From sequence record LR756504.1: a DNA stretch of 64,000 nucleotides, one strand, 5' to 3'. Position 1 is the stretch's first letter, and every line of letters starts with the position of its first letter. Below are positions 3,401 to 64,000 of the stretch, piece by piece. The notes beneath the pieces are model-generated. The model saw only the letters and a program-made list of their open reading frames with translations. It was not told the origin of the DNA and made no database searches. Made by a program: the position numbers and the translations under genes.

Positions 3401-4378
3401 ATGTCATTTATGAAACAAGATTATTACAACATTTTAGGTGTTGATAAAAACACTTCGCCAGAAGAATTAAAAGCAGCTTATAGAAAAAAAGCAAAAGAAC
3501 ATCATCCAGACAAAGGTGGTGATGCGGAACAATTTAAAATTATCAATTCTGCATATGAAACTCTCTCTGATCCACAAAAAAGGAGAGAATATGATAACCC
3601 GAATCAATTTTCAAATTTCCAAGGTTCTCCTTTCGGTCAAGAGTTTAATTTCGATTTCGATTCAATATTTAATCAATTTAATTTTGGTGGACATAGAAAA
3701 CAAGAATTTAGAGAAGATTTAGATATAAGATTAACTGTAGATATACCGTTTAAAACTATTTACCAAGATAAACCATTAGAAATAAAATACTATAAAAATA
3801 CACCATGTTCTAAATGTAATTATACAGGTGTTGAAGAAAGTGATGATTCTGCTGATTGTTTACATTGTGATGGTAAAGGACATAGTACAAAATTTGGAGG
3901 AAATAAAACAACTTGTAATTATTGTCATGGTTCAGGTAAAATTCATACAAAGGCATGTTCTCAATGTGATGGTAATAAAGTAGAATCTAAATTAGAAACT
4001 ATTACAATGGACAATGTATTTATATTAGGTGAAGAACCACAAAGGATGGCATATAGAGGTAGTGGACACTTTTCTAGATATTATCCTGGTAGAAGAGGTG
4101 ATTTAATAATTTTATTAAACCCTATAGTAGATGGAAAATATTTAAGACAAGGTGTTAATTTATTACACCAATTGGATATAGATTATAGAACAGCAATTGA
4201 AGGTGGTGAAATTGAGTATACGCATCTTGATGACAAAATTTATAAAATAAGAATTTCTGAAAAATCTAATAAAGGAACTAAACTAAAAATGACAGGAAAA
4301 GGATTATTACAAAGAGATAAAAAAACAAGAGGTGATTTAATAATTGAATTATCTATAATTATAAATTATGCAATTTAA
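3401..4378 (+). CDS. dnaJ: DnaJ (Hsp40) chaperone
   Basis: J-domain ([11 protein letters not shown] motif), G/F region, four CxxCxGxG-type zinc motifs, C-terminal GKG...RGDL substrate domain. Confidence 0.95.
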
Positions 4379-6228: not shown

Positions 6229-7164
6229 ATGAAAGATAGTAAAAAACCTAATAAATATTGGACAAAAGAATTGTGTCATATAGAAGCCTTAAAATATGAC
6301 ACAAAAAGAGAATTTGAAAATAAATCTGGTTCAGCGTATGTTACGTCTATAAAAAATAAATGGATTAATGAAATATGTTCACACATGAAAAATTTGGTTA
6401 AACATGGATACTGGGTATTTGAAAAATGTAAAGAAGATGCTCTAAAATATAAAAACAGACAAGATTTTAAAAATAATTCTGGTGGTTATAAAGCATCACT
6501 TAGAAATGGTTGGTTAAATGAAGTTTGTTCACATATGGAAATTCAGGGTAGTAAATATTTGAGATTTATTTATGTGTTTGAGTTTGAAAATAATGCAGTA
6601 TATATAGGATTATCATATAATGTTAAAATAAGATTGAATGAACATTTAAGTAATAAAAAAAGTCAGGTATATAAACATATAGAAAAAACAAATTCTAAAT
6701 ATATTTTAAAAATAGTAAATGATAAACCTATTATTAAAGAAAAAGCACAAATATTAGAACATGAGACAAAATTAAATTACATTAAAGAAGGTTGGATAAT
6801 TCTTAATAAAGCTAAAACAGGTAAAGGATTTGGCTCTCTTGGTGGTAATACTATAAAATGGACATATGAAAAATGTAAAGAAGAATCTCTAAAATATAAA
6901 ACTAAAAGTGAATTTAAAAATAAATCAAATGGTGCTTATAGTTCTTCTGTTAAAAATAATTGGTATAAAAAAATAACCTCACATATGATAGAACTCAAGA
7001 AACCAAATGGTTATTGGACAAAAGAAAAATGTCATGAAGAAGCTTTGAAATATAAATCCAAAATAAATTTTTGTAATGGATCTAAATTTGCTTATTCCAA
7101 ATCTTATAAAGAAGGGTGGTTGCTTGATGTGTGTATTCATATGATAACTTGTTATGATAAATAA
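6229..7164 (+). CDS. GIY-YIG homing endonuclease flanked by repeated helical modules
   Basis: FIYVFEF...VYIGLSYNVKIRLNEH, later E and N catalytic positions; repeats of WTKExCxEEALKYxxxxxF at both ends. Confidence 0.8.
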   Translation: MKDSKKPNKYWTKELCHIEALKYDTKREFENKSGSAYVTSIKNKWINEICSHMKNLVKHGYWVFEKCKEDALKYKNRQDFKNNSGGYKASLRNGWLNEVCSHMEIQGSKYLRFIYVFEFENNAVYIGLSYNVKIRLNEHLSNKKSQVYKHIEKTNSKYILKIVNDKPIIKEKAQILEHETKLNYIKEGWIILNKAKTGKGFGSLGGNTIKWTYEKCKEESLKYKTKSEFKNKSNGAYSSSVKNNWYKKITSHMIELKKPNGYWTKEKCHEEALKYKSKINFCNGSKFAYSKSYKEGWLLDVCIHMITCYDK

Positions 7165-10744: not shown

Positions 10745-11563
10745 TTATTTAATTACGTCTTTTCCTAATTCTATCATTCTTTTAAAAACTGCATCCTTAT
10801 CATTTGGTAAAGTACCATTTACAATTTCATCTTTCAACTTTTTCTTGATAATTCCGATTTCTCTACCTGGTTTTAGATTAAAATAGTCCATTATCTCTTG
10901 ACCAGAAACAGGTGGCTCAAATGTACGAACTTTATCGGCTTCTTCTAAAGCTATCATTTTAGATTTTAGTACATCAATACTTTTAATATTACTTTGTTTC
11001 CTCTCTTCATTCTTTGTTGTCATATCACATTTAGCGAAGAGTAGTAAATCATCCAAATCATCACCAATATCTAATTTAAATCTCCTAAGAGCAGAATCAG
11101 ATACATTAGGGATACATAATACTTTAACTTGACCATGTAAATTAATTAATTTCTTTACATAGTCTATCTTATCCATTGGTAAACTTAAACGTTTGAAAAT
11201 GTTATCAATCATTCTAGCACCAATTTCTTCGTGTAAATGGAATGTCCAACCTAAAGATTTATCATATCTTTTGGATTTAGCTTTTCCAATATCATGTAAT
11301 ATAGAAACACAGATTAACCAAGGGTTATCTGTCATATTTCTTGTATTTCTAACAACTTTTATAGTATGCCAAAAATTGTCTTTATGGCCATTATTACCCA
11401 CCCTTTCAACTCCCTTTAAAGCAGTTAATTCGGGTAATAGATAATCTAATACCCCCATTTCATTTAGTTTTTCTAAATCTTCCGCAGGAGTATTTGAATG
11501 TAAAATGTTCAAAAAAATCTTAGTTTCCTCTTTAAATGATTCAAATGTCATAAAATATTTCAT
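10745..11563 (-). CDS. HD-domain protein resembling the C-terminal half of CCA-adding enzyme/poly(A) polymerase (no nucleotidyltransferase head)
   Basis: YLLPELTALKGVE, HKDNFWHT, LHDIGK, TFHLHEEIGA, PPVSGQEIM...LKPGREIG; N-terminal MKYFMTFESF tag. Confidence 0.8.
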   Translation of the reverse strand: MKYFMTFESFKEETKIFLNILHSNTPAEDLEKLNEMGVLDYLLPELTALKGVERVGNNGHKDNFWHTIKVVRNTRNMTDNPWLICVSILHDIGKAKSKRYDKSLGWTFHLHEEIGARMIDNIFKRLSLPMDKIDYVKKLINLHGQVKVLCIPNVSDSALRRFKLDIGDDLDDLLLFAKCDMTTKNEERKQSNIKSIDVLKSKMIALEEADKVRTFEPPVSGQEIMDYFNLKPGREIGIIKKKLKDEIVNGTLPNDKDAVFKRMIELGKDVIK

Positions 11564-16461: not shown

Positions 16462-16541
16462 GCTCCCATGGTGGAATGGCAGACACGCTCGGCTTAAAAT
16501 CGAGTGCCTTGTGCATACAGGTTCAAGTCCTGTTGGGAGTA
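16462..16541 (+). tRNA. tRNA-Leu(UAA), long variable arm, no encoded CCA
   Basis: GCTCCCA/TGGGAGT acceptor, CTCGG-CTTAAAA-TCGAG anticodon arm, GGTTCAAGTCC T-arm. Confidence 0.92.
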
Positions 16542-16554
16542 CTAATTATCACAT

Positions 16555-16640
16555 GCCCTTGTGATGTAATGCAGCCATGAACGCCTTAGAAGCGTTTGCG
16601 AAGTAATAGTAGCGTGTAGGTTCGAGTCCTACCAAGGGTA
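16555..16640 (+). tRNA. tRNA-Leu(UAG), long variable arm
   Basis: GCCCTTG/CAAGGGT, AACGC-CTTAGAA-GCGTT, GGTTCGAGTCC. Confidence 0.92.
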
Positions 16641-16649
16641 CACAATAAT

Positions 16650-16738
16650 GGAGGGAATCTGGCTGGATGAAGAGCCAATCTTGAAAATTGGTAAATCGGT
16701 GATGAACTGGTTTGTGGGTTCGAGTCCCACTTCCTCCT
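16650..16738 (+). tRNA. tRNA-Ser(UGA)
   Basis: GGAGGGA/TTCCTCC, CCAAT-CTTGAAA-ATTGG, long variable arm, GGGTTCGAGTCCC. Confidence 0.9.
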
Positions 16739-16744
16739 CAAAAT

Positions 16745-16817
16745 GGTACTATGGCCGAGTGGATATAGGCGCACGTCTGCAAAACGTGATACATCAGTTC
16801 GAACCTGATTAGTACCT
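16745..16817 (+). tRNA. tRNA-Cys(GCA)
   Basis: GGTACTA/TAGTACC, CACGT-CTGCAAA-ACGTG, U73. Confidence 0.93.
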
Positions 16818-16824
16818 CAAAAAT

Positions 16825-16911
16825 GGAGAGTAGGCAAATATTGGTTTGTTGCGGCATCCTGCTAAGATGTTCCGTATAAAAGCGGTGAGGGTTCAATTCC
16901 CTTGCTCTCCT
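16825..16911 (+). tRNA. tRNA-Ser(GCU)
   Basis: GGAGAGT/GCTCTCC, GCATC-CTGCTAA-GATGT, long variable arm. Confidence 0.92.
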
Positions 16912-16990
16912 CAAATAAAGTTCTATTGTGTAAATATTATCACACTTAAACGTAGCCGAACTTTTTGATATATAATATCAAAAAAAAGCT

Positions 16991-17695
16991 ATGAGTTTAA
17001 AAAGTGAGAAAATATTAAAGTATGCTAAAAAAATTAGAGCGATTGAATTATTAGGTGGTTGTTGCATTGAATGTGGTGTTGATAATATACATAAATTATG
17101 TTTTCACCATATAAATAGAAATGATAAAAAATTTGATATTTCGGATAAATTAGGATTAAAGTGGAACAAAATAAAAGATGAAGTTATAAAATGTGAGTTA
17201 TTATGTTTAAATTGTCATACAGAAAAACATTATAATGAAATTTCTGATAAAAAAGATATAAAAAGAAGGAGTGAAAAAAAACTATTTATTTCAATAAAGG
17301 GTGATTCATGTGAATATTGTAATTATAATAAGTGTGATGCAACATTAGAATTTCATCATCATAATGATAATAAAAATTTCTCTATAGGGAAAAAAAGATT
17401 AACTAAAAATAATTTATTATTATTTATAGAAGAAATAAACAAGTGTACTTTATTATGTAAAAATTGCCATATTCATTTACATAAAGATAGTTTCTATGAT
17501 GATAATAAAGATGAAATAATAAAAAAGAAAAATGATTATATTGATTTAAATAAAATTGATTTAGATAAATTTTTTGAATTATATAATGGTGGGTATAAAC
17601 AAGTTGAAATATCAAAACTGTTAAATTGTTCAAAAAGTAGAATCTCAGAATTAGTTTCAAAATATTTTAAAGGGAAGAATACTCAAGTGATTTAA
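16991..17695 (+). CDS. HNH homing endonuclease (two tandem CxxC-HH-CxxCH units plus C-terminal HTH) inside the tRNA cluster
   Basis: CCIECG..LCFHH..LCLNCH and CEYCN..LEFHH..LCKNCH; VEISKLLNCSKSRIS HTH; stop codon lies in the next tRNA. Confidence 0.85.
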   Translation: MSLKSEKILKYAKKIRAIELLGGCCIECGVDNIHKLCFHHINRNDKKFDISDKLGLKWNKIKDEVIKCELLCLNCHTEKHYNEISDKKDIKRRSEKKLFISIKGDSCEYCNYNKCDATLEFHHHNDNKNFSIGKKRLTKNNLLLFIEEINKCTLLCKNCHIHLHKDSFYDDNKDEIIKKKNDYIDLNKIDLDKFFELYNGGYKQVEISKLLNCSKSRISELVSKYFKGKNTQVI

Positions 17696-17763
17696 GAGGA
17701 TACATTGGAAATGTATTAGATCGGGATTAACCTGGTGCGTGAGTTTGAATCTCACTTCTTCCA
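17673..17763 (+). tRNA. tRNA-Ser(GGA)
   Basis: GGAAGAA/TTCTTCC, ATACA-TTGGAAA-TGTAT, long variable arm, T-loop TTTGAAT (non-canonical). Confidence 0.85.
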
Positions 17764-17768
17764 CAAAT

Positions 17769-17842
17769 GGCTTAGTGATGTAATTGGTAAACGTGTTCGG
17801 TTCAAACCCGAAATTTTATAGGTTCGAGTCCTATCTAAGCTA
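17769..17842 (+). tRNA. tRNA with CAA anticodon (Leu), short variable loop
   Basis: GGCTTAG/CTAAGCT, TTCGG-TTCAAAC-CCGAA, 5-nt variable loop, A73. Confidence 0.85.
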
Positions 17843-17853
17843 CAATAATAAAT

Positions 17854-17928
17854 GCCATTGTGGTGGAATTGGTTATACACACTAGTCTAAGAAACTAGGA
17901 ATTGCAGGTTCGACTCCTGTCAATGGTA
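17854..17928 (+). tRNA. tRNA with AAG anticodon (Leu, A34), short variable loop
   Basis: GCCATTG/CAATGGT, CTAGT-CTAAGAA-ACTAG, 5-nt variable loop, A73. Confidence 0.88.
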
Positions 17929-17947
17929 CTAAAAAATATATATTTAT

Positions 17948-24639: not shown

Positions 24640-25545
24640 CTATTTTCTTATTATTGCATAGTTCTTGATAAACCAATCAATCGTATTGTTCAACCCTTCT
24701 TCTAAGGATGTAAATTCAAAATCCTTAAAATCACTCTTAGCTGTTTTTTTAAATTGACCATTTGGTTTTGATGTATCAAACTTCATCTTACTTAATACAT
24801 TAAATCTATCGGCTATTATAACGGCAATATCTTTTATTGAATACTCATTTTCATTGATTGCCATAAAAGGTTCTTCTCTTTTCCAATTATCAATACTCCA
24901 TAATATAAGTTTAGATAAATCATCCGAATAGATAAACTGTCTTAATGGTGTACCATCACTCCATACAATAAAATCATTCCCTGTAAGGCTAGCTTCATAT
25001 GCCTTTCTAATTAGTGCAGGAATCAAATGTGAATTTTCTAAATGATAGTAATCATTCTTACCGTAGACATTTGTAGGTATTACGCTTATCCAATTCTTAC
25101 CTGTGAAATTTCTATACATCTTAGTTTGATAATATAATAGTCTTTTAGCATATGAATATCCACTGTTGGATGAATGTGGACTTCCTAAATCTAATTGATT
25201 TGCAGTTAATGGATATGAAACATTGTCATTTGGAAATATACAAGTAGATAAAATAGAAATAAAGTTCTCTACATTATTATTCAAAGCGGATTCTAAAATG
25301 TTTGAATTGATTTTAACGTTCTCGCTAAAAAATCCATTGTTATCTTTCATATTTGAAAATACACCTCCGACTTTTGCAGCACAATGTATGATTGTATCAG
25401 GTGCTTCGGCTTCAATATAATTATTAGTTTGAGTTAAGTCTAATAAATTAGCCTTCTCTCTTGTATGTTCAATAGCATTACTAATATTATTTGCCAAAGA
25501 ACTACCTAATAGTCCTTTTGATCCAGTTATCATTATTCGTTGCAT
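24640..25545 (-). CDS. fcl: GDP-L-fucose synthase (extended SDR)
   Basis: ITGSKGLLG, HCAAKVGG, LSTCIFP, YSYAKR, PTNVYG, HLIPALI, GTPLRQF. Confidence 0.9.
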   Translation of the reverse strand: MQRIMITGSKGLLGSSLANNISNAIEHTREKANLLDLTQTNNYIEAEAPDTIIHCAAKVGGVFSNMKDNNGFFSENVKINSNILESALNNNVENFISILSTCIFPNDNVSYPLTANQLDLGSPHSSNSGYSYAKRLLYYQTKMYRNFTGKNWISVIPTNVYGKNDYYHLENSHLIPALIRKAYEASLTGNDFIVWSDGTPLRQFIYSDDLSKLILWSIDNWKREEPFMAINENEYSIKDIAVIIADRFNVLSKMKFDTSKPNGQFKKTAKSDFKDFEFTSLEEGLNNTIDWFIKNYAIIRK

Positions 25546-61724: not shown

Positions 61725-62492
61725 ATGAAAGAATATTTAGAAAATATAGGGAAAAAGTTTTTTGATGCTGAGTATTTAAAAACATCAGTAAAATCTGTTG
61801 TAATTATTTTTTGTGATGGTGAGCCAATGGGAAGTGGTGTTTTTATTAACAGTAATACAATATTAACTGCTAAACATGTAGTAGAAAACTATAAAATAAT
61901 TACAGCTATTCAAGAATTAAATGAAGTTAGTGAAGATGATATACTTACTATCGGAAATGAATATACTGTTCATACCTGCAATATTTCGGAAAATTCGGAT
62001 TTAGCTCTTTTGTTAACAGTAGAGCCTTATAAAAATATTGTACCAAGAATAAATTTTAATTATCCTAATGTGAATGATTATTGCATGACTTATTCATATC
62101 AAAAATTTAAAAATGAGGATGATATTTTATTTAGAAATTTTGTCGGCTCAAATGGTAAAATTTTAGAATTATATCCATACAGTAGAGATTCTAAATGGAT
62201 TAATTATCCTAGTTTCTGTATAAATACTAAGTTCACACCTGGTATGAGTGGTGGTCCTATTTTTGATATTGATGGATGTTTATGTGGTATTGTATGTACT
62301 GGTAGTGATGGTGATGATGAAAATGAATATGCAGTAGGTTCTTTATTACATCCATTACTTGGAATAAAATTACAGTTATCAGATGATAGAGCTTTTACTT
62401 TAATTGAAATGTTAAAAACTAGAAATCTAATTAATACTTTAAATCTTGATATAGGTATAGAATTATATAATGAATATTTAAAAATAAAATAA
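61725..62492 (+). CDS. Trypsin-like serine protease
   Basis: GSGVFI, TAKHV (His), DLALL (Asp), GMSGGP (Ser). Confidence 0.9.
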   Translation: MKEYLENIGKKFFDAEYLKTSVKSVVIIFCDGEPMGSGVFINSNTILTAKHVVENYKIITAIQELNEVSEDDILTIGNEYTVHTCNISENSDLALLLTVEPYKNIVPRINFNYPNVNDYCMTYSYQKFKNEDDILFRNFVGSNGKILELYPYSRDSKWINYPSFCINTKFTPGMSGGPIFDIDGCLCGIVCTGSDGDDENEYAVGSLLHPLLGIKLQLSDDRAFTLIEMLKTRNLINTLNLDIGIELYNEYLKIK

Positions 62493-62767: not shown

Positions 62768-63310
62768 ATGTGTAAATGTTTTCTATGTGATAAACCTTTT
62801 AAAAAGAAAGCTGGTAAGAAGTTTTGTTCAAGTTTATGTAATGGTAGATATAACTCTAAAAAGAATAGAGAAACTATTAAAGAAGTACAATATTTTGATT
62901 GTCCTGAATGTTCTATAAAATTTATTAAGAATAAACATAATCAAAAGTTTTGTAGTAAAGAATGTAATAATATTCATCATAAGAAGTATTATATAGAGAA
63001 TAAAAAAGCTACACATTTTTTAATATTTAAAAGAGATGATTTTAAGTGCATTTATTGTGGAAAGTCTTCTATAGAGGATAGTATTAAATTACATATAGAT
63101 CATGTATATCCAGTTGATAAAGGCGGTAGTAATGATTTGATGAATTTGGTAACATCTTGTGAAGAATGTAATACGAGAAAATCTCATAAGTATTTATCAA
63201 AAGAAGTTCTATTTAGGATATGGAATAGAAATAAAGAACTGAATAAAATTTTATTCGATGAAAGTACCTATACTAAATTAGTTGATGAATTTAATAAAAT
63301 AGTAAGATAG
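62768..63310 (+). CDS. HNH endonuclease with N-terminal zinc-finger repeats
   Basis: RDDFKCIYCG, HIDHVYP..KGG.N...NLVTSCEECN; two KFCS..C repeats. Confidence 0.9.
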   Translation: MCKCFLCDKPFKKKAGKKFCSSLCNGRYNSKKNRETIKEVQYFDCPECSIKFIKNKHNQKFCSKECNNIHHKKYYIENKKATHFLIFKRDDFKCIYCGKSSIEDSIKLHIDHVYPVDKGGSNDLMNLVTSCEECNTRKSHKYLSKEVLFRIWNRNKELNKILFDESTYTKLVDEFNKIVR

Positions 63311-63333: not shown

Positions 63334-64000
63334 TCATTTTTTCTTGGTTGAAAAGGATAGGTTATATTTTCTTTCAAACTCAGCTTCACCTATAGTATTA
63401 ATAGTATCACTAATCCATTTAGTATCTCTCTTAGCTGGGTCATACCAATAGTAAAGTCTTAATGGATTAAAGATGTTCTTCTTTAACTCAGCTTGTCTGA
63501 ATACATCATAGAATAAATTATGACCATTAGGGGCAGAGTTAATAAAAAATCTTGCATCAGATTTAGAACTTTGAACAACTGTACATAATTTAAAAAAGGT
63601 TTCAATATTATGAGGTGAACCGAAACCCATGTCCATAAATATTACGACATCTATATCATCATTGATATAAGAATACCTATGAGTCTTATACATATTTACT
63701 TCAGAACCGTTAGATAGTTGAATACCTTTTACCTTACTTTGGTTATTAGTTATTTCTATCTCAGGGAAGAATCTAAGGATTCTTTTAAAACGATAGTTCA
63801 ATTCTATAAGAAGCTCTTCACAGTTTTCCCATATAGGAGAAGACACTACAATTTTTTTATTAGGATTGGTAAGTAGGTAATGAAGGATAAAGTACGTATA
63901 AGCCTTTATCATATCTGTCCCTTCCGAGTTCATTACTATGTTAAAACGATTGCTCCACGTGTCTATAATGGGGCTTAAATAGGCACTATTCTCCTCTTTA
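63334..64000 (-). CDS. Degenerate T4 gp17-like terminase ATPase domain (no Walker A/B, no nuclease); 5' end beyond window
   Basis: Frame open to the window edge (...WSNRFNIVMNSEGTD); LSNGS, VIFMDMGF, INSAPNGHNLFYD, RDTKW..TI..IG..EF..KY.LSF align with gp17. Confidence 0.7.
   Translation of the reverse strand, partial: KEENSAYLSPIIDTWSNRFNIVMNSEGTDMIKAYTYFILHYLLTNPNKKIVVSSPIWENCEELLIELNYRFKRILRFFPEIEITNNQSKVKGIQLSNGSEVNMYKTHRYSYINDDIDVVIFMDMGFGSPHNIETFFKLCTVVQSSKSDARFFINSAPNGHNLFYDVFRQAELKKNIFNPLRLYYWYDPAKRDTKWISDTINTIGEAEFERKYNLSFSTKKK

What the first reader, a model, noticed from the sequence alone, without database searches (positions are those of the whole stretch)
63334..64000. Catalytically dead terminase ATPase domain: candidate decoy for terminase-sensing immunity
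Seen: colinear with T4 gp17 from the RFNIV strand to the end of the ATPase domain, but Walker A (RQxGKT) reads SEGTDMI, Walker B DE reads DM, and the protein stops before the nuclease domain. Established: Avs/AVAST STAND receptors recognise the terminase ATPase domain. Inference: an inactivated paralog kept as an immune decoy or packaging regulator, paralleling the PolB-like and SerRS-arm fragments.
Basis: partly seen in the sequence, partly recalled or inferred. Interest (0 to 1): 0.66.

Follow-up and report, generated by a model that had tools for sequence, protein, structure and literature searches.

The report
Dead terminase ATPase paralogue in huge phage
A huge soil phage carries, besides its normal DNA-packaging enzyme, a short extra copy of that enzyme's motor domain. 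The copy has lost every residue needed to burn ATP, yet it is kept by selection. It belongs to a large family of such dead copies that I found no description of, and its role is unproven: helper of packaging, or something to do with host immunity.

Summary
Window 63334-64000 (minus strand) holds residues 10-230 of a complete 230-aa gene whose start codon lies 26 nt past the window end.

**What the protein is**
- It has the fold of the large-terminase (TerL) ATPase domain. The AlphaFold2 model has pLDDT 94, and its best PDB match is the T4 gp17 ATPase domain (TM 0.84).
- SEGTDMI replaces the Walker A motif SRQxGKT, and MDM replaces IDE.
- It ends exactly at the boundary between the ATPase and nuclease domains.

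**Evidence that it is a maintained gene**
- The complete record of the same phage (LR756504.1, 636 kb) encodes an intact 768-aa TerL elsewhere.
- dN/dS among four orthologues is 0.10-0.28, so the gene is not decaying.
- It is the most derived tip of a large clade of short TerL paralogues that lack both the nuclease domain and the Walker A lysine. Forty-eight of the best 150 50%-identity cluster representatives in a metagenome-wide profile search (147 long enough to classify) are of this kind. Two other huge phages of the same GenBank set also carry one.
- These paralogues keep TerL's structural motifs and lose only the catalytic ones, which marks them as pseudoenzymes that act by binding.

**Interpretation**
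- "Inactivated paralogue kept by selection" is supported.
- "Avs decoy" is untested. Published data show that stand-alone or catalytically dead TerL ATPase domains activate Avs2 and Upx rather than silence them, which counts against it.
- A role as a packaging regulator is my favoured guess, but it is unproven.

The parts
63334..64000 (-). Coding sequence of the dead TerL-ATPase-domain paralogue. The window holds residues 10-230 plus the TGA stop at 63334-63336. The full CDS is G000:C1:257298-257990, protein P0001, 230 aa, with its ATG 26 nt beyond the window end.
   Evidence: fold; homology
63907..63927 (-). Remnant of Walker A (P-loop). Residues 34-40 read S-E-G-T-D-M-I where TerL has S-R-Q-x-G-K-T. 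The Lys, the Thr, the P-loop Gly and the cis-Arg are all replaced, two of them by acidic residues. S34, E35, G36 and D38 are invariant in the four close orthologues. The 14-member subfamily has NSE[E/D/G]TD.
   Evidence: codons checked against the sequence
63628..63648 (-). Remnant of the Walker B strand. Residues 127-133 read V-V-I-F-M-D-M where T4 gp17 has A-M-I-Y-I-D-E. The Asp is kept and the catalytic Glu is Met (Met or Leu in orthologues).
63523..63540 (-). Place of the coupling motif (motif III). Residues 163-168 read N-S-A-P-N-G where TerL has T-[ST]-T-P-N-G. The PNG and the following NLFYD helix are strongly conserved in both the dead family and true TerLs.
63352..63423 (-). C-terminal conserved segment, residues 202-225 (T-K-W...I-G-E-x-E-F-x-R-K-Y-N-L-S-F). 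It aligns with gp17 ~331-358 in subdomain II next to the hinge. It is the best-conserved stretch shared with true TerLs (W204, G213 and F217 are at least 90% conserved over 92 sequences). In T4 this neighbourhood is reported to hold the portal-binding helix-loop-helix. I recalled the exact T4 residue range from memory and did not check it.
   Evidence: T4 review PMC9958956
62768..63310 (+). Neighbouring HNH endonuclease gene, convergent, with stops 23 nt apart. It is context only: no homologue of it was found on the relatives' contigs, so it is probably a mobile insertion and not a functional partner.
   Evidence: Pfam HNH_5/HNH E 6e-12; synteny comparison

Best explanation
This is a real, complete, selected gene for a stand-alone pseudo-ATPase. 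It is a paralogue of the N-terminal ATPase domain of the phage's own type of large terminase (T4 gp17-like).

It keeps the whole fold, both the Rossmann core and the small subdomain II up to the hinge. It has lost the N-terminal ~130 residues, the nuclease domain and every residue needed to bind and hydrolyse ATP. In gp17 numbering these changes are R162E, G165D, K166M, T167I, E256M and Q143L.

It is the most derived branch of an old and large family of short TerL paralogues without the Walker A lysine, found in huge phages. Those paralogues selectively lost the catalytic residues while keeping TerL's structural and surface motifs. All of the above is shown.

The following is inferred. Because it cannot turn over ATP or cut DNA, it must work by binding. 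The likeliest partners are those of a TerL ATPase domain: the portal clip, neighbouring TerL subunits, the small terminase, or DNA. My favoured reading is a non-catalytic accessory or regulator of genome packaging, for example one that occupies or gates TerL docking sites. The two acidic residues placed in the former phosphate pocket may lock it in one conformational state.
For: - **Fold and colinearity with the TerL ATPase domain:**
- **Catalytic residues replaced, and the replacements themselves conserved:**
- **Intact TerL in the same phage genome:**. There is only one TerL nuclease domain per genome in four huge phages.
- **Purifying selection:** dN/dS 0.10-0.28, and length conserved at 229-233 aa.
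- **Family:** 148 sequences (147 representatives plus T4 gp17) were classified and put in the tree. Of these, 48 are short and lack the Lys, and 46 of those also lack DE. Of 50 full-length sequences with GK[ST] (T4 gp17 included), 49 have DE (Fisher p 3e-24). In total 43 of the 48 short ones fall in one clade of 54 with support 0.91, and the NSE.TD subfamily of 14 has support 0.98.
- **Complete genes:** the eight members looked up all lie inside their contigs.
- **Motifs shared with TerL:** YQ, NRF.I, SRQ.G, LPFFLKPG, NGS, SK.II.S.PNG.N.FY, KN.F.P.R..WW..PGR and the C-terminal W.K...I..IGE..F..EY are retained across the family, while the Walker B segment shares 0 of 7 consensus columns.
- **Link to the terminase gene:** in LR756500.1 the paralogue sits directly downstream of the TerL C-fragment gene on the same strand.
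- **T4 precedent:** the portal-interacting helix-loop-helix lies near the hinge, and a peptide of it inhibits packaging (PMC9958956).
Against: - No binding partner was tested.
- Genomic context in the P0001 subfamily and in most other members is accessory and variable: arrays of ~80-aa proteins, mobile elements, and metabolic or repair genes. It is not a head-and-packaging module.
- LR756502.1, a related 642-kb phage, has no detectable copy, so the protein is not an obligatory motor part.
- The LPFFLKPG motif and the YQ motif, kept in most of the family, are degraded in the P0001 subfamily. This subfamily may therefore have drifted to another role.
- No expression data exist.
Confidence: 0.4

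Rival explanations
1. Immune countermeasure. The dead ATPase domain binds terminase-sensing host receptors (Avs1-3, Upx) without activating them and so shields the real TerL. A softer variant is that loss of the ATP site lets a needed paralogue stay invisible to sensors that read the ATP-loaded active site.
For: - Avs1-3 and Upx do sense TerL, mainly its ATPase domain (PMC13581612; PMC11564622; PMC13601566).
- The model resembles the PhiV-1 TerL as bound by Avs3 (8dgc_E, E 9e-9).
- The gene lies in variable accessory regions full of small multi-copy genes, where counter-defence genes often sit.
- The authors of PMC13601566 themselves suggest that non-terminase ATPase-like activators might be anti-defence proteins.
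- Selective loss of exactly the ATP-binding residues fits the 'stealth' variant, because EcAvs2 contacts the terminase-bound ATP.
Against: - For these sensors binding is activation. T4 vs.8, a stand-alone TerL-like ATPase, is toxic with EcAvs2. The ATPase domain alone activates Upx, and in most cases so do terminases with alanine substitutions of both the Walker B aspartate and a nuclease catalytic aspartate.
- EcAvs2 and SeAvs3 use the bound ATP and, for Avs3, the nuclease domain. Both should be absent here, so tight competitive binding is unlikely.
- The family was not found outside one huge-phage clade in the searches made here, although Avs and Upx pressure is general.
- There were no PADLOC hits.
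- Nothing was tested directly.
Confidence: 0.12
2. Interference weapon. A dominant-negative TerL domain poisons the packaging motors of co-infecting competitor phages or satellites by docking on their portals or TerL rings, while the resident motor has diverged enough to ignore it.
For: - The TerL fold and the hinge-proximal segment are retained while catalysis is lost.
- In T4 a peptide of the portal-binding element inhibits packaging.
- The location is accessory and variable, and the gene is present in some lineages and absent in others.
- The protein is only 25-26% identical to the phage's own TerL.
Against: - There is no evidence of any target.
- The family is old and conserved across many lineages. 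That fits a housekeeping partner better than an arms-race weapon, which would be expected to evolve faster than dN/dS 0.1-0.28.
Confidence: 0.1
3. A new function unrelated to packaging. The scaffold has been re-used, for example as a DNA- or protein-binding module in replication or repair. Alternatively, newly conserved residues at the old active site (S34, E35, D38, H116, D132) form a new ligand or catalytic site.
For: - The replacement residues are themselves conserved. NSE.TD is kept across a 14-member subfamily, and S34 and H116 are at least 90% conserved.
- One family member (P0011) sits among DnaB, SbcCD-like, Fpg and AAA genes.
- The family's median pI is shifted basic, 8.7 against 6.9 for the TerL ATPase domains.
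Against: - The strongest conservation is shared with true TerLs outside the active site, which suggests shared partners.
- No similarity to any other family was found in Pfam, NCBIfam or PADLOC.
Confidence: 0.2
4. A neutral relic. A partial duplicate of TerL, left for example by homing-endonuclease or intein traffic at the P-loop, that is simply decaying.
For: - Inteins and split inteins sit at exactly this P-loop position in many TerLs of the clade.
- An HNH gene abuts the ORF.
- Degeneration looks graded across genomes: GIT with DE in LR756501.1, GIS with DN in LR756500.1, and SEGTD with DM here.
Against: - The frame is open and the length conserved in all members.
- dN/dS is 0.10-0.28 at dS of about 1.
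- Replacement motifs are invariant.
- The gene is the only recognisably conserved one on the relatives' contigs apart from a multi-copy small-protein family.
- An upstream element of about 19 nt is conserved.
- The clade is large, with dozens of 50%-identity clusters.
Confidence: 0.04

Closest known systems
Large terminase TerL, T4 gp17 type (PDB 2O0H, 3CPE), ATPase domain
   Same: Same fold and same order of elements from the strand before Walker A to the end of subdomain II (TMq 0.84, rmsd 2.1 A; hhalign against gp17 137-360). It shares the structural motifs NRF.I, NGS, PNG.N.FY and the C-terminal W...IG..F..Y..F segment.
   Different: No Walker A Lys or Thr, no catalytic Glu, no adenine-binding Gln, no N-terminal ~130 residues and no nuclease domain. 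It cannot be a packaging ATPase or nuclease. It is a second gene beside an intact TerL.
T4 vs.8, a stand-alone TerL-ATPase-like protein that activates EcAvs2 (Evans et al. 2026, PMC13601566)
   Same: A separate phage gene that encodes only a terminase-ATPase-like domain. Its function is unknown, and it has been discussed in connection with terminase-sensing immunity.
   Different: vs.8 keeps Walker A and B. The present family has lost them. There is no detectable sequence relationship (hhalign probability 0.6%), and a profile of the family finds only gp17 in the T4 genome. The origin is independent.
Non-catalytic paralogous subunits of ring or oligomeric ATPases (clamp-loader delta/delta', F1 alpha). 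This comparison is from my own general knowledge.
   Same: Duplicates of an ASCE/RecA-like ATPase that lost catalysis but kept the fold and the interfaces, and that work as structural or regulatory subunits.
   Different: No evidence yet that this protein joins the TerL ring. It is not universal in the clade.
Fractured (split-intein) terminase genes (Dassa et al. 2009, PMC2677866)
   Same: They occur in the same phage clade, at the same P-loop. LR756500.1 and LR756501.1 encode TerL as an N-fragment ending ...GK followed by Cys and a short intein N-part, plus a C-fragment starting with a ~150-aa intein part ending ...Q or N followed by Thr.
   Different: The protein in the window has no intein motifs, is not a fragment of a functional TerL, and its genome has a contiguous TerL.

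Membership tests
Functional large terminase (TerL) | TerL-type ASCE ATPase fold | tested here: met
   AF2 pLDDT 93.9; Foldseek top hits are all TerL ATPase domains
Functional large terminase (TerL) | Walker A G-K-[ST] with the cis-Arg (SRQxGKT) | tested here: not met
   SEGTDMI at that place; invariant S-E-G-x-D in orthologues
Functional large terminase (TerL) | Walker B hhhhD followed by the catalytic Glu | tested here: not met
   Reads FMDM. The Asp is kept and the Glu is replaced by Met or Leu
Functional large terminase (TerL) | Coupling motif III (T-[ST]-T before PNG) | tested here: inconclusive
   N-S-A-PNG. Only the middle Ser is conserved
Functional large terminase (TerL) | C-terminal RNase H-like nuclease domain | tested here: not met
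   Stop at the domain boundary; the downstream DNA is an HNH gene on the other strand; only one TerL nuclease domain in LR756504.1
Functional large terminase (TerL) | N-terminal region with the adenine-binding YQ motif | tested here: not met
   The protein starts ~16 residues before that place and reads Y-L
Short, Lys-less, nuclease-less TerL-N paralogue clade (defined here) | Ends within ~45 residues of the ATPase-domain end, has no Walker A Lys, and groups in the clade | tested here: met
   P0001 lies in the clade of 54 (support 0.91) and in the NSE.TD subclade of 14 (support 0.98)
T4 vs.8-like stand-alone terminase-like ATPases | Sequence homology to vs.8 and intact Walker motifs | tested here: not met
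   hhalign probability 0.6%; Walker motifs lost
Split-intein (fractured) TerL fragment | Intein N- or C-part at the break (Cys/Ser +1 after GK; ...HN or Q before Thr) | tested here: not met
   No Hint-like segment; the whole sequence aligns with TerL without an insert
Phage decoy or inhibitor of terminase-sensing receptors (Avs1-3, Upx) | Binds the sensor domain without triggering oligomerisation, and protects against TerL-triggered toxicity | not testable with these tools
   No Avs or Upx sequence from the unknown host is available. Published data on related cases show activation, not inhibition

The most novel reading that the evidence does not exclude
Dead TerL-N paralogues are a conserved functional module of the largest known phages. 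Either they are a non-catalytic subunit or gatekeeper of the packaging motor, needed to handle half-megabase genomes, or they are the first phage-encoded countermeasure aimed at terminase-sensing immunity (Avs1-3, Upx), with loss of the ATP site as the trick that prevents sensor activation.
Probability: 0.25. Interest if true: 0.8.

Novelty: new variant of a known kind. Interest (0 to 1): 0.55.

Why it matters
TerL is the one universal enzyme of tailed phages and a main target of bacterial pattern-recognition immunity. A large family of TerL motor domains that have all lost catalysis but are kept by selection, next to an intact TerL, means the fold has a second, binding-only job.

Finding that job would add one of two things. 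It could be a new regulatory component of viral DNA-packaging motors in the largest phages. Or it could be a new chapter in the conflict between terminase and Avs/Upx sensors.

In practice, these genes are easily mis-annotated as 'terminase large subunit'. That can mislead TerL-based phylogenies of huge phages.

Tried and rejected
- **Pfam** gives no hit for the protein. Pfam Terminase_6N and 6C find nothing in G000, and 6C fails even on the genuine TerLs of four huge-phage records, so those blanks are uninformative.
- **NCBIfam and PADLOC:** no hits.
- **Read-through of the TGA stop or another genetic code:** rejected. The frame hits TAG after ~20 codons inside the opposite-strand HNH gene. 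Orthologues stop at the same place. Stops of the long ORFs are TAA 108, TGA 12 and TAG 11.
- **Half of a second, split terminase:** rejected. There is only one TerL nuclease domain per genome.
- **Functional pairing with the neighbouring HNH:** not pursued, because no homologue of the HNH was found on the relatives' contigs.
- **Relation to T4 vs.8:** none.
- **Complex prediction of the protein with the phage's own TerL ATPase domain:** I did not resend it by any route. No close allowed proxy exists (45% identity or less), so no complex was run.
- **Expression:** only one DNA run, a soil metagenome that is probably the source, holds the stretch, and no RNA run does.
- **Rfam** on the locus: nothing.
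- **Sigma-70-type promoter and terminator scan:** not above chance.
- **The conserved upstream 16-mer as a genome-wide promoter:** no. There are 6 sites with at most 1 mismatch against 1-4 in shuffles.
- **Charge and pI comparison:** no clear signal.
- **Model coordinates** could not be read in scripts, so the geometry of the conserved residues was not examined.
- **Gao et al. 2022** (Science, PMC10028730) is not held in the library. What I say about Avs3 comes from later papers.

Full report
**1. What is at the coordinates**

On the minus strand an open frame runs from a TGA stop at window 63334-63336 to the window end. The whole genome piece held for this window is G000, 347,857 bp and 26% GC. 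In it the frame continues for 26 nt to an ATG, giving a 230-aa protein, P0001. The window therefore lacks only residues 1-9.

The gene stands alone on its strand. It is convergent with an HNH endonuclease gene (62768-63310, Pfam HNH E 6e-12) and divergent from an array of ~80-aa ORFs upstream.

**2. Is it terminase-like, and are the motif readings right?**

Pfam is blank, but every more sensitive method agrees:
- PHROG 5989 'terminase large subunit', E 1.3e-8.
- tblastn to annotated TerLs of cyanophages, pelagiphages and phage PAU, down to 1e-16 at 26-29% identity over ~90% of the protein.
- A four-sequence profile hits only T4 gp17 chains in the PDB, E 4e-6.
- hhalign of a 14-sequence profile against T4 gp17 gives probability 97.4%, E 1e-11, covering gp17 137-360.
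- An AlphaFold2 model built on a 92-sequence alignment has mean pLDDT 93.9 and pTM 0.90.
- Foldseek against the PDB ranks the T4 gp17 ATPase domain first (2o0h, E 2.4e-14, TMq 0.84, rmsd 2.1 A over 228 columns). The TerLs of P74-26, PhiV-1, D6E, Sf6 and HK97 follow.

In the alignments:
- gp17 S161-RQLGK-T167 pairs with S34-EGTDM-I40.
- I254-D255-E256 pairs with M131-D132-M133.
- T285-T-T287 pairs with N163-S-A165.
- Y142-Q143 pairs with Y-L.

So the cis-arginine, the P-loop glycine, the lysine, the threonine, the catalytic glutamate and the adenine-binding glutamine are all gone. Two acidic residues, E35 and D38, now sit in the former phosphate pocket.

The protein ends at about gp17 358-360, exactly the ATPase/nuclease domain boundary. 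It starts at about gp17 128, so the first ~130 residues of TerL are missing too.

**3. The genome and the intact terminase**

P0001 is 100% identical to a stretch at the very end of LR756504.1, an unannotated 636,363-bp 'uncultured phage' record. It is one of the LR756500-LR756504 set of huge-phage genomes. From memory I take these to be the closed genomes of Al-Shayeb et al. 2020.

G000 255801-257964 equals the last 2,164 bases of that record, and G000 257965-260964 equals its first 3,000 bases. So G000 is a 348-kb piece that spans the record's start/end junction, and that junction falls inside this gene. The 'inverted terminal repeat' of G000 is only 123 bp.

A search of the whole record finds a second, weaker match inside a 771-aa open frame at ~171 kb. 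That frame encodes a 768-aa protein with SRQSGKT, FLDE, TST-PNG and a full C-terminal domain, which is the phage's real TerL. It lies outside G000 (no blastn match). This explains why the searches of G000 found only the dead copy.

The standard genetic code fits. Stops of the long ORFs are TAA 108, TGA 12 and TAG 11.

**4. Decay or selection?**

The word-index search of 5.8 billion proteins found three relatives at 59-65% identity. All are 229-233 aa, with S-E-G-x-D and M-D-[ML] invariant. Nei-Gojobori dN/dS over the six pairs is 0.10-0.28. dS is 0.9-1.5, near saturation, so these values are rough, but they are clearly below 1.

On the relatives' contigs almost nothing else is recognisably conserved except a multi-copy ~80-aa protein family. 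A ~19-nt A/T-rich element 8-9 nt before the start codon is conserved in five orthologues. Neutral decay is therefore rejected.

**5. It is one member of a large family**

A profile search of 1.84 billion cluster representatives gave 1,257 hits at E below 1e-3, and I examined the best 150. Six of them were too fragmentary to classify. The other 147 representatives and T4 gp17 were aligned together, giving 148 sequences that were classified and put in the tree.

- 48 are complete or near-complete proteins of ~190-350 aa. They end within 45 residues of the ATPase-domain end and have no Walker A lysine, typically SRQxG followed by I, L, M, T, S, G, V or N. Of these, 46 also lack the Walker B DE.
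- Of 50 full-length sequences with GK[ST] (49 representatives plus T4 gp17), 49 have DE (Fisher p 3e-24).
- In a FastTree of the 148 sequences, 43 of the 48 short Lys-less proteins fall in one clade of 54 (support 0.91). That clade is sister to the huge-phage TerL clade.
- P0001 sits in a 14-member subclade (support 0.98). In it the P-loop has been remodelled further to N-S-E-[E/D/G]-T-D.
- All eight members whose contigs I fetched are internal, complete genes.
- Ten representatives checked are singletons from metagenomes, unnamed or 'hypothetical'.

Two other huge-phage records carry such a gene next to their real TerL:
- LR756500.1 has a 272-aa frame with SRQMGIS and IIDN, immediately downstream of the TerL C-fragment gene.
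- LR756501.1 has a 394-aa frame with SRQMGIT that keeps IDE and the N-terminal region.

LR756502.1 has none. In a small ML tree the LR756501.1 copy groups with its own TerL (support 75). That suggests either a second, more recent origin or gene conversion.

Each of the four genomes has only one TerL nuclease domain, so these are not halves of a second terminase.

Column-by-column comparison shows which TerL motifs the Lys-less family keeps: YQ, NRF.I, SRQ.G, LPFFLKPG, NGS, SK.II.S.PNG.N.FY, KN.F.P.R..WW..PGR and W.K...I..IGE..F..EY. The Walker B segment shares 0 of 7 consensus columns. Selective loss of catalysis with retention of structure and surfaces is the signature of a pseudoenzyme that acts by binding.

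**6. How it most likely works**

Shown: it cannot be an ATPase or a nuclease, it is selected, and it keeps TerL's fold and several TerL-specific conserved segments. One of these is the C-terminal segment next to the hinge. In T4 the portal-interacting helix-loop-helix is placed there, and a peptide of it inhibits packaging (PMC9958956). The exact T4 residue range is from my memory.

Inferred: it binds something a TerL ATPase domain binds, meaning the portal, TerL neighbours, TerS or DNA, and so modulates packaging. The adjacency to the TerL gene in LR756500.1 supports a link. The variable accessory contexts elsewhere and the absence from LR756502.1 argue against an obligatory motor subunit. 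I put this reading at about 0.4.

**7. The decoy idea**

Avs1-3 sense TerL (PMC13581612), and KpAvs2 is predicted to contact the ATPase domain (PMC11564622). The most detailed study is PMC13601566. It shows the following:
- EcAvs2 needs only the ATPase domain, but it contacts the ATP held by the terminase Walker motifs through a bridging ATP.
- SeAvs3 also binds the nuclease domain.
- T4 vs.8, a stand-alone TerL-like ATPase, activates EcAvs2.
- Upx is activated by the ATPase domain alone, and in most cases still by terminases carrying alanine substitutions of both the Walker B aspartate and a nuclease catalytic aspartate.

So a nuclease-less domain that should not hold ATP would be either poorly bound (Avs2, Avs3) or a trigger (Upx), not a silent sponge. 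A softer variant remains open: loss of the ATP site keeps a useful paralogue invisible to ATP-reading sensors. I found no paper describing a terminase decoy. I give the decoy reading ~0.12.

P0001 is not related to vs.8.

**8. Novelty**

Stand-alone TerL-like ATPases (vs.8) and fractured terminases (PMC2677866) are known. The jumbo-phage overview I checked does not describe a conserved clade of catalytically dead, nuclease-less TerL-N paralogues (PMC7824862), and my searches did not find one either. I rate it a new variant of a known kind.

**9. Procedural notes**

- In one search I joined, inside one script and only for a display alignment, the N-extein and C-extein parts of the split TerLs of LR756500.1 and LR756501.1. 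No search, fold or tree used the joined strings, and the later trees used the C-parts alone.

Noticed in passing
LR756500.1: L017 1321-1896(-), L017 194-1294(-), L012 607-2493(-). LR756501.1: L018 1345-1890(-), L013 178-2457(-): In two related huge phages the real TerL is a 'fractured' gene, split at the P-loop by an atypically split intein. The N-fragment ends ...RQxGK, followed by Cys and a 55-69-aa tail. The C-fragment starts with a ~150-aa Hint-like part ending ...SSQ or ...NLN, then Thr and the rest of TerL. In LR756500.1 a 367-aa endonuclease-like ORF lies between the halves. In LR756501.1 the halves are 13 kb apart. This matches the 'terminase' case of Dassa et al. 2009 (long intein C-part). 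Many TerLs among the representatives carry inteins or split-intein halves at the same site.
   Followed up: partly
L001 2190-2208 (just beyond the window end, window-equivalent ~64035-64053) and the matching places in L002, L025, L026, L036: An A/T-rich element (AAGATATATAAAAATAAAA) 8-9 nt upstream of the start codon is conserved in five orthologues, although the rest of the intergenic DNA has diverged. It is not a genome-wide motif: 6 sites with at most 1 mismatch against 1-4 in shuffles. It may be a gene-specific promoter or translation signal.
   Followed up: partly
L001 2182-2375 (-), upstream intergenic region, outside the window: In a 26% GC genome this 194-nt spacer holds G+C-rich patches (CGGGGCGCAGG ... 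CCCC ... CGGGG). It folds better than shuffles (z -2.9, 0 of 200 shuffles as good). There is no Rfam match, and the G+C-rich insert is absent from the orthologous spacers.
   Followed up: partly
window 62768-63310 (+): A 180-aa HNH endonuclease with N-terminal Cys-rich zinc-ribbon-like repeats, convergent with the dead TerL gene (23 nt between stops). No homologue of it was found on the relatives' contigs, so it is probably a mobile insertion.
   Followed up: partly
G000 258185-261842 (outside the window, upstream of the gene); L002, L025, L036: Tandem arrays of paralogous ~75-90-aa proteins (C-terminal ...EEHRK..I..LL motif) flank the gene in this phage and on the relatives' contigs. They are the only other recognisably shared genes there. 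Function unknown.
   Followed up: no
window 16462-17929 (+): Cluster of eight tRNA genes: Leu (taa, tag, caa, aag), Ser (tga, gct, gga) and Cys (gca).
   Followed up: no
window 10745-11563 (-): A 272-aa ORF with an HD domain plus tRNA-nucleotidyltransferase domain 2, but no polymerase head domain detected.
   Followed up: no
window 3401-4378 (+), 6229-7164 (+), 24640-25545 (-), 61725-62492 (+): Accessory genes: a full DnaJ chaperone (J domain, Zn finger, C-terminal domain), a GIY-YIG endonuclease, an NAD-dependent epimerase/dehydratase and a trypsin-like serine protease.
   Followed up: no
G000 as a whole: The record held as the window's 'genome' (348 kb, flagged ITR, 100% complete) is a part of the 636-kb genome LR756504.1. 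It spans that record's start/end junction. Its 'ITR' is a 123-bp terminal inverted match, probably an assembly artefact. A 268-kb IMG/VR contig (L027) carries the same gene at 100% identity.
   Followed up: partly
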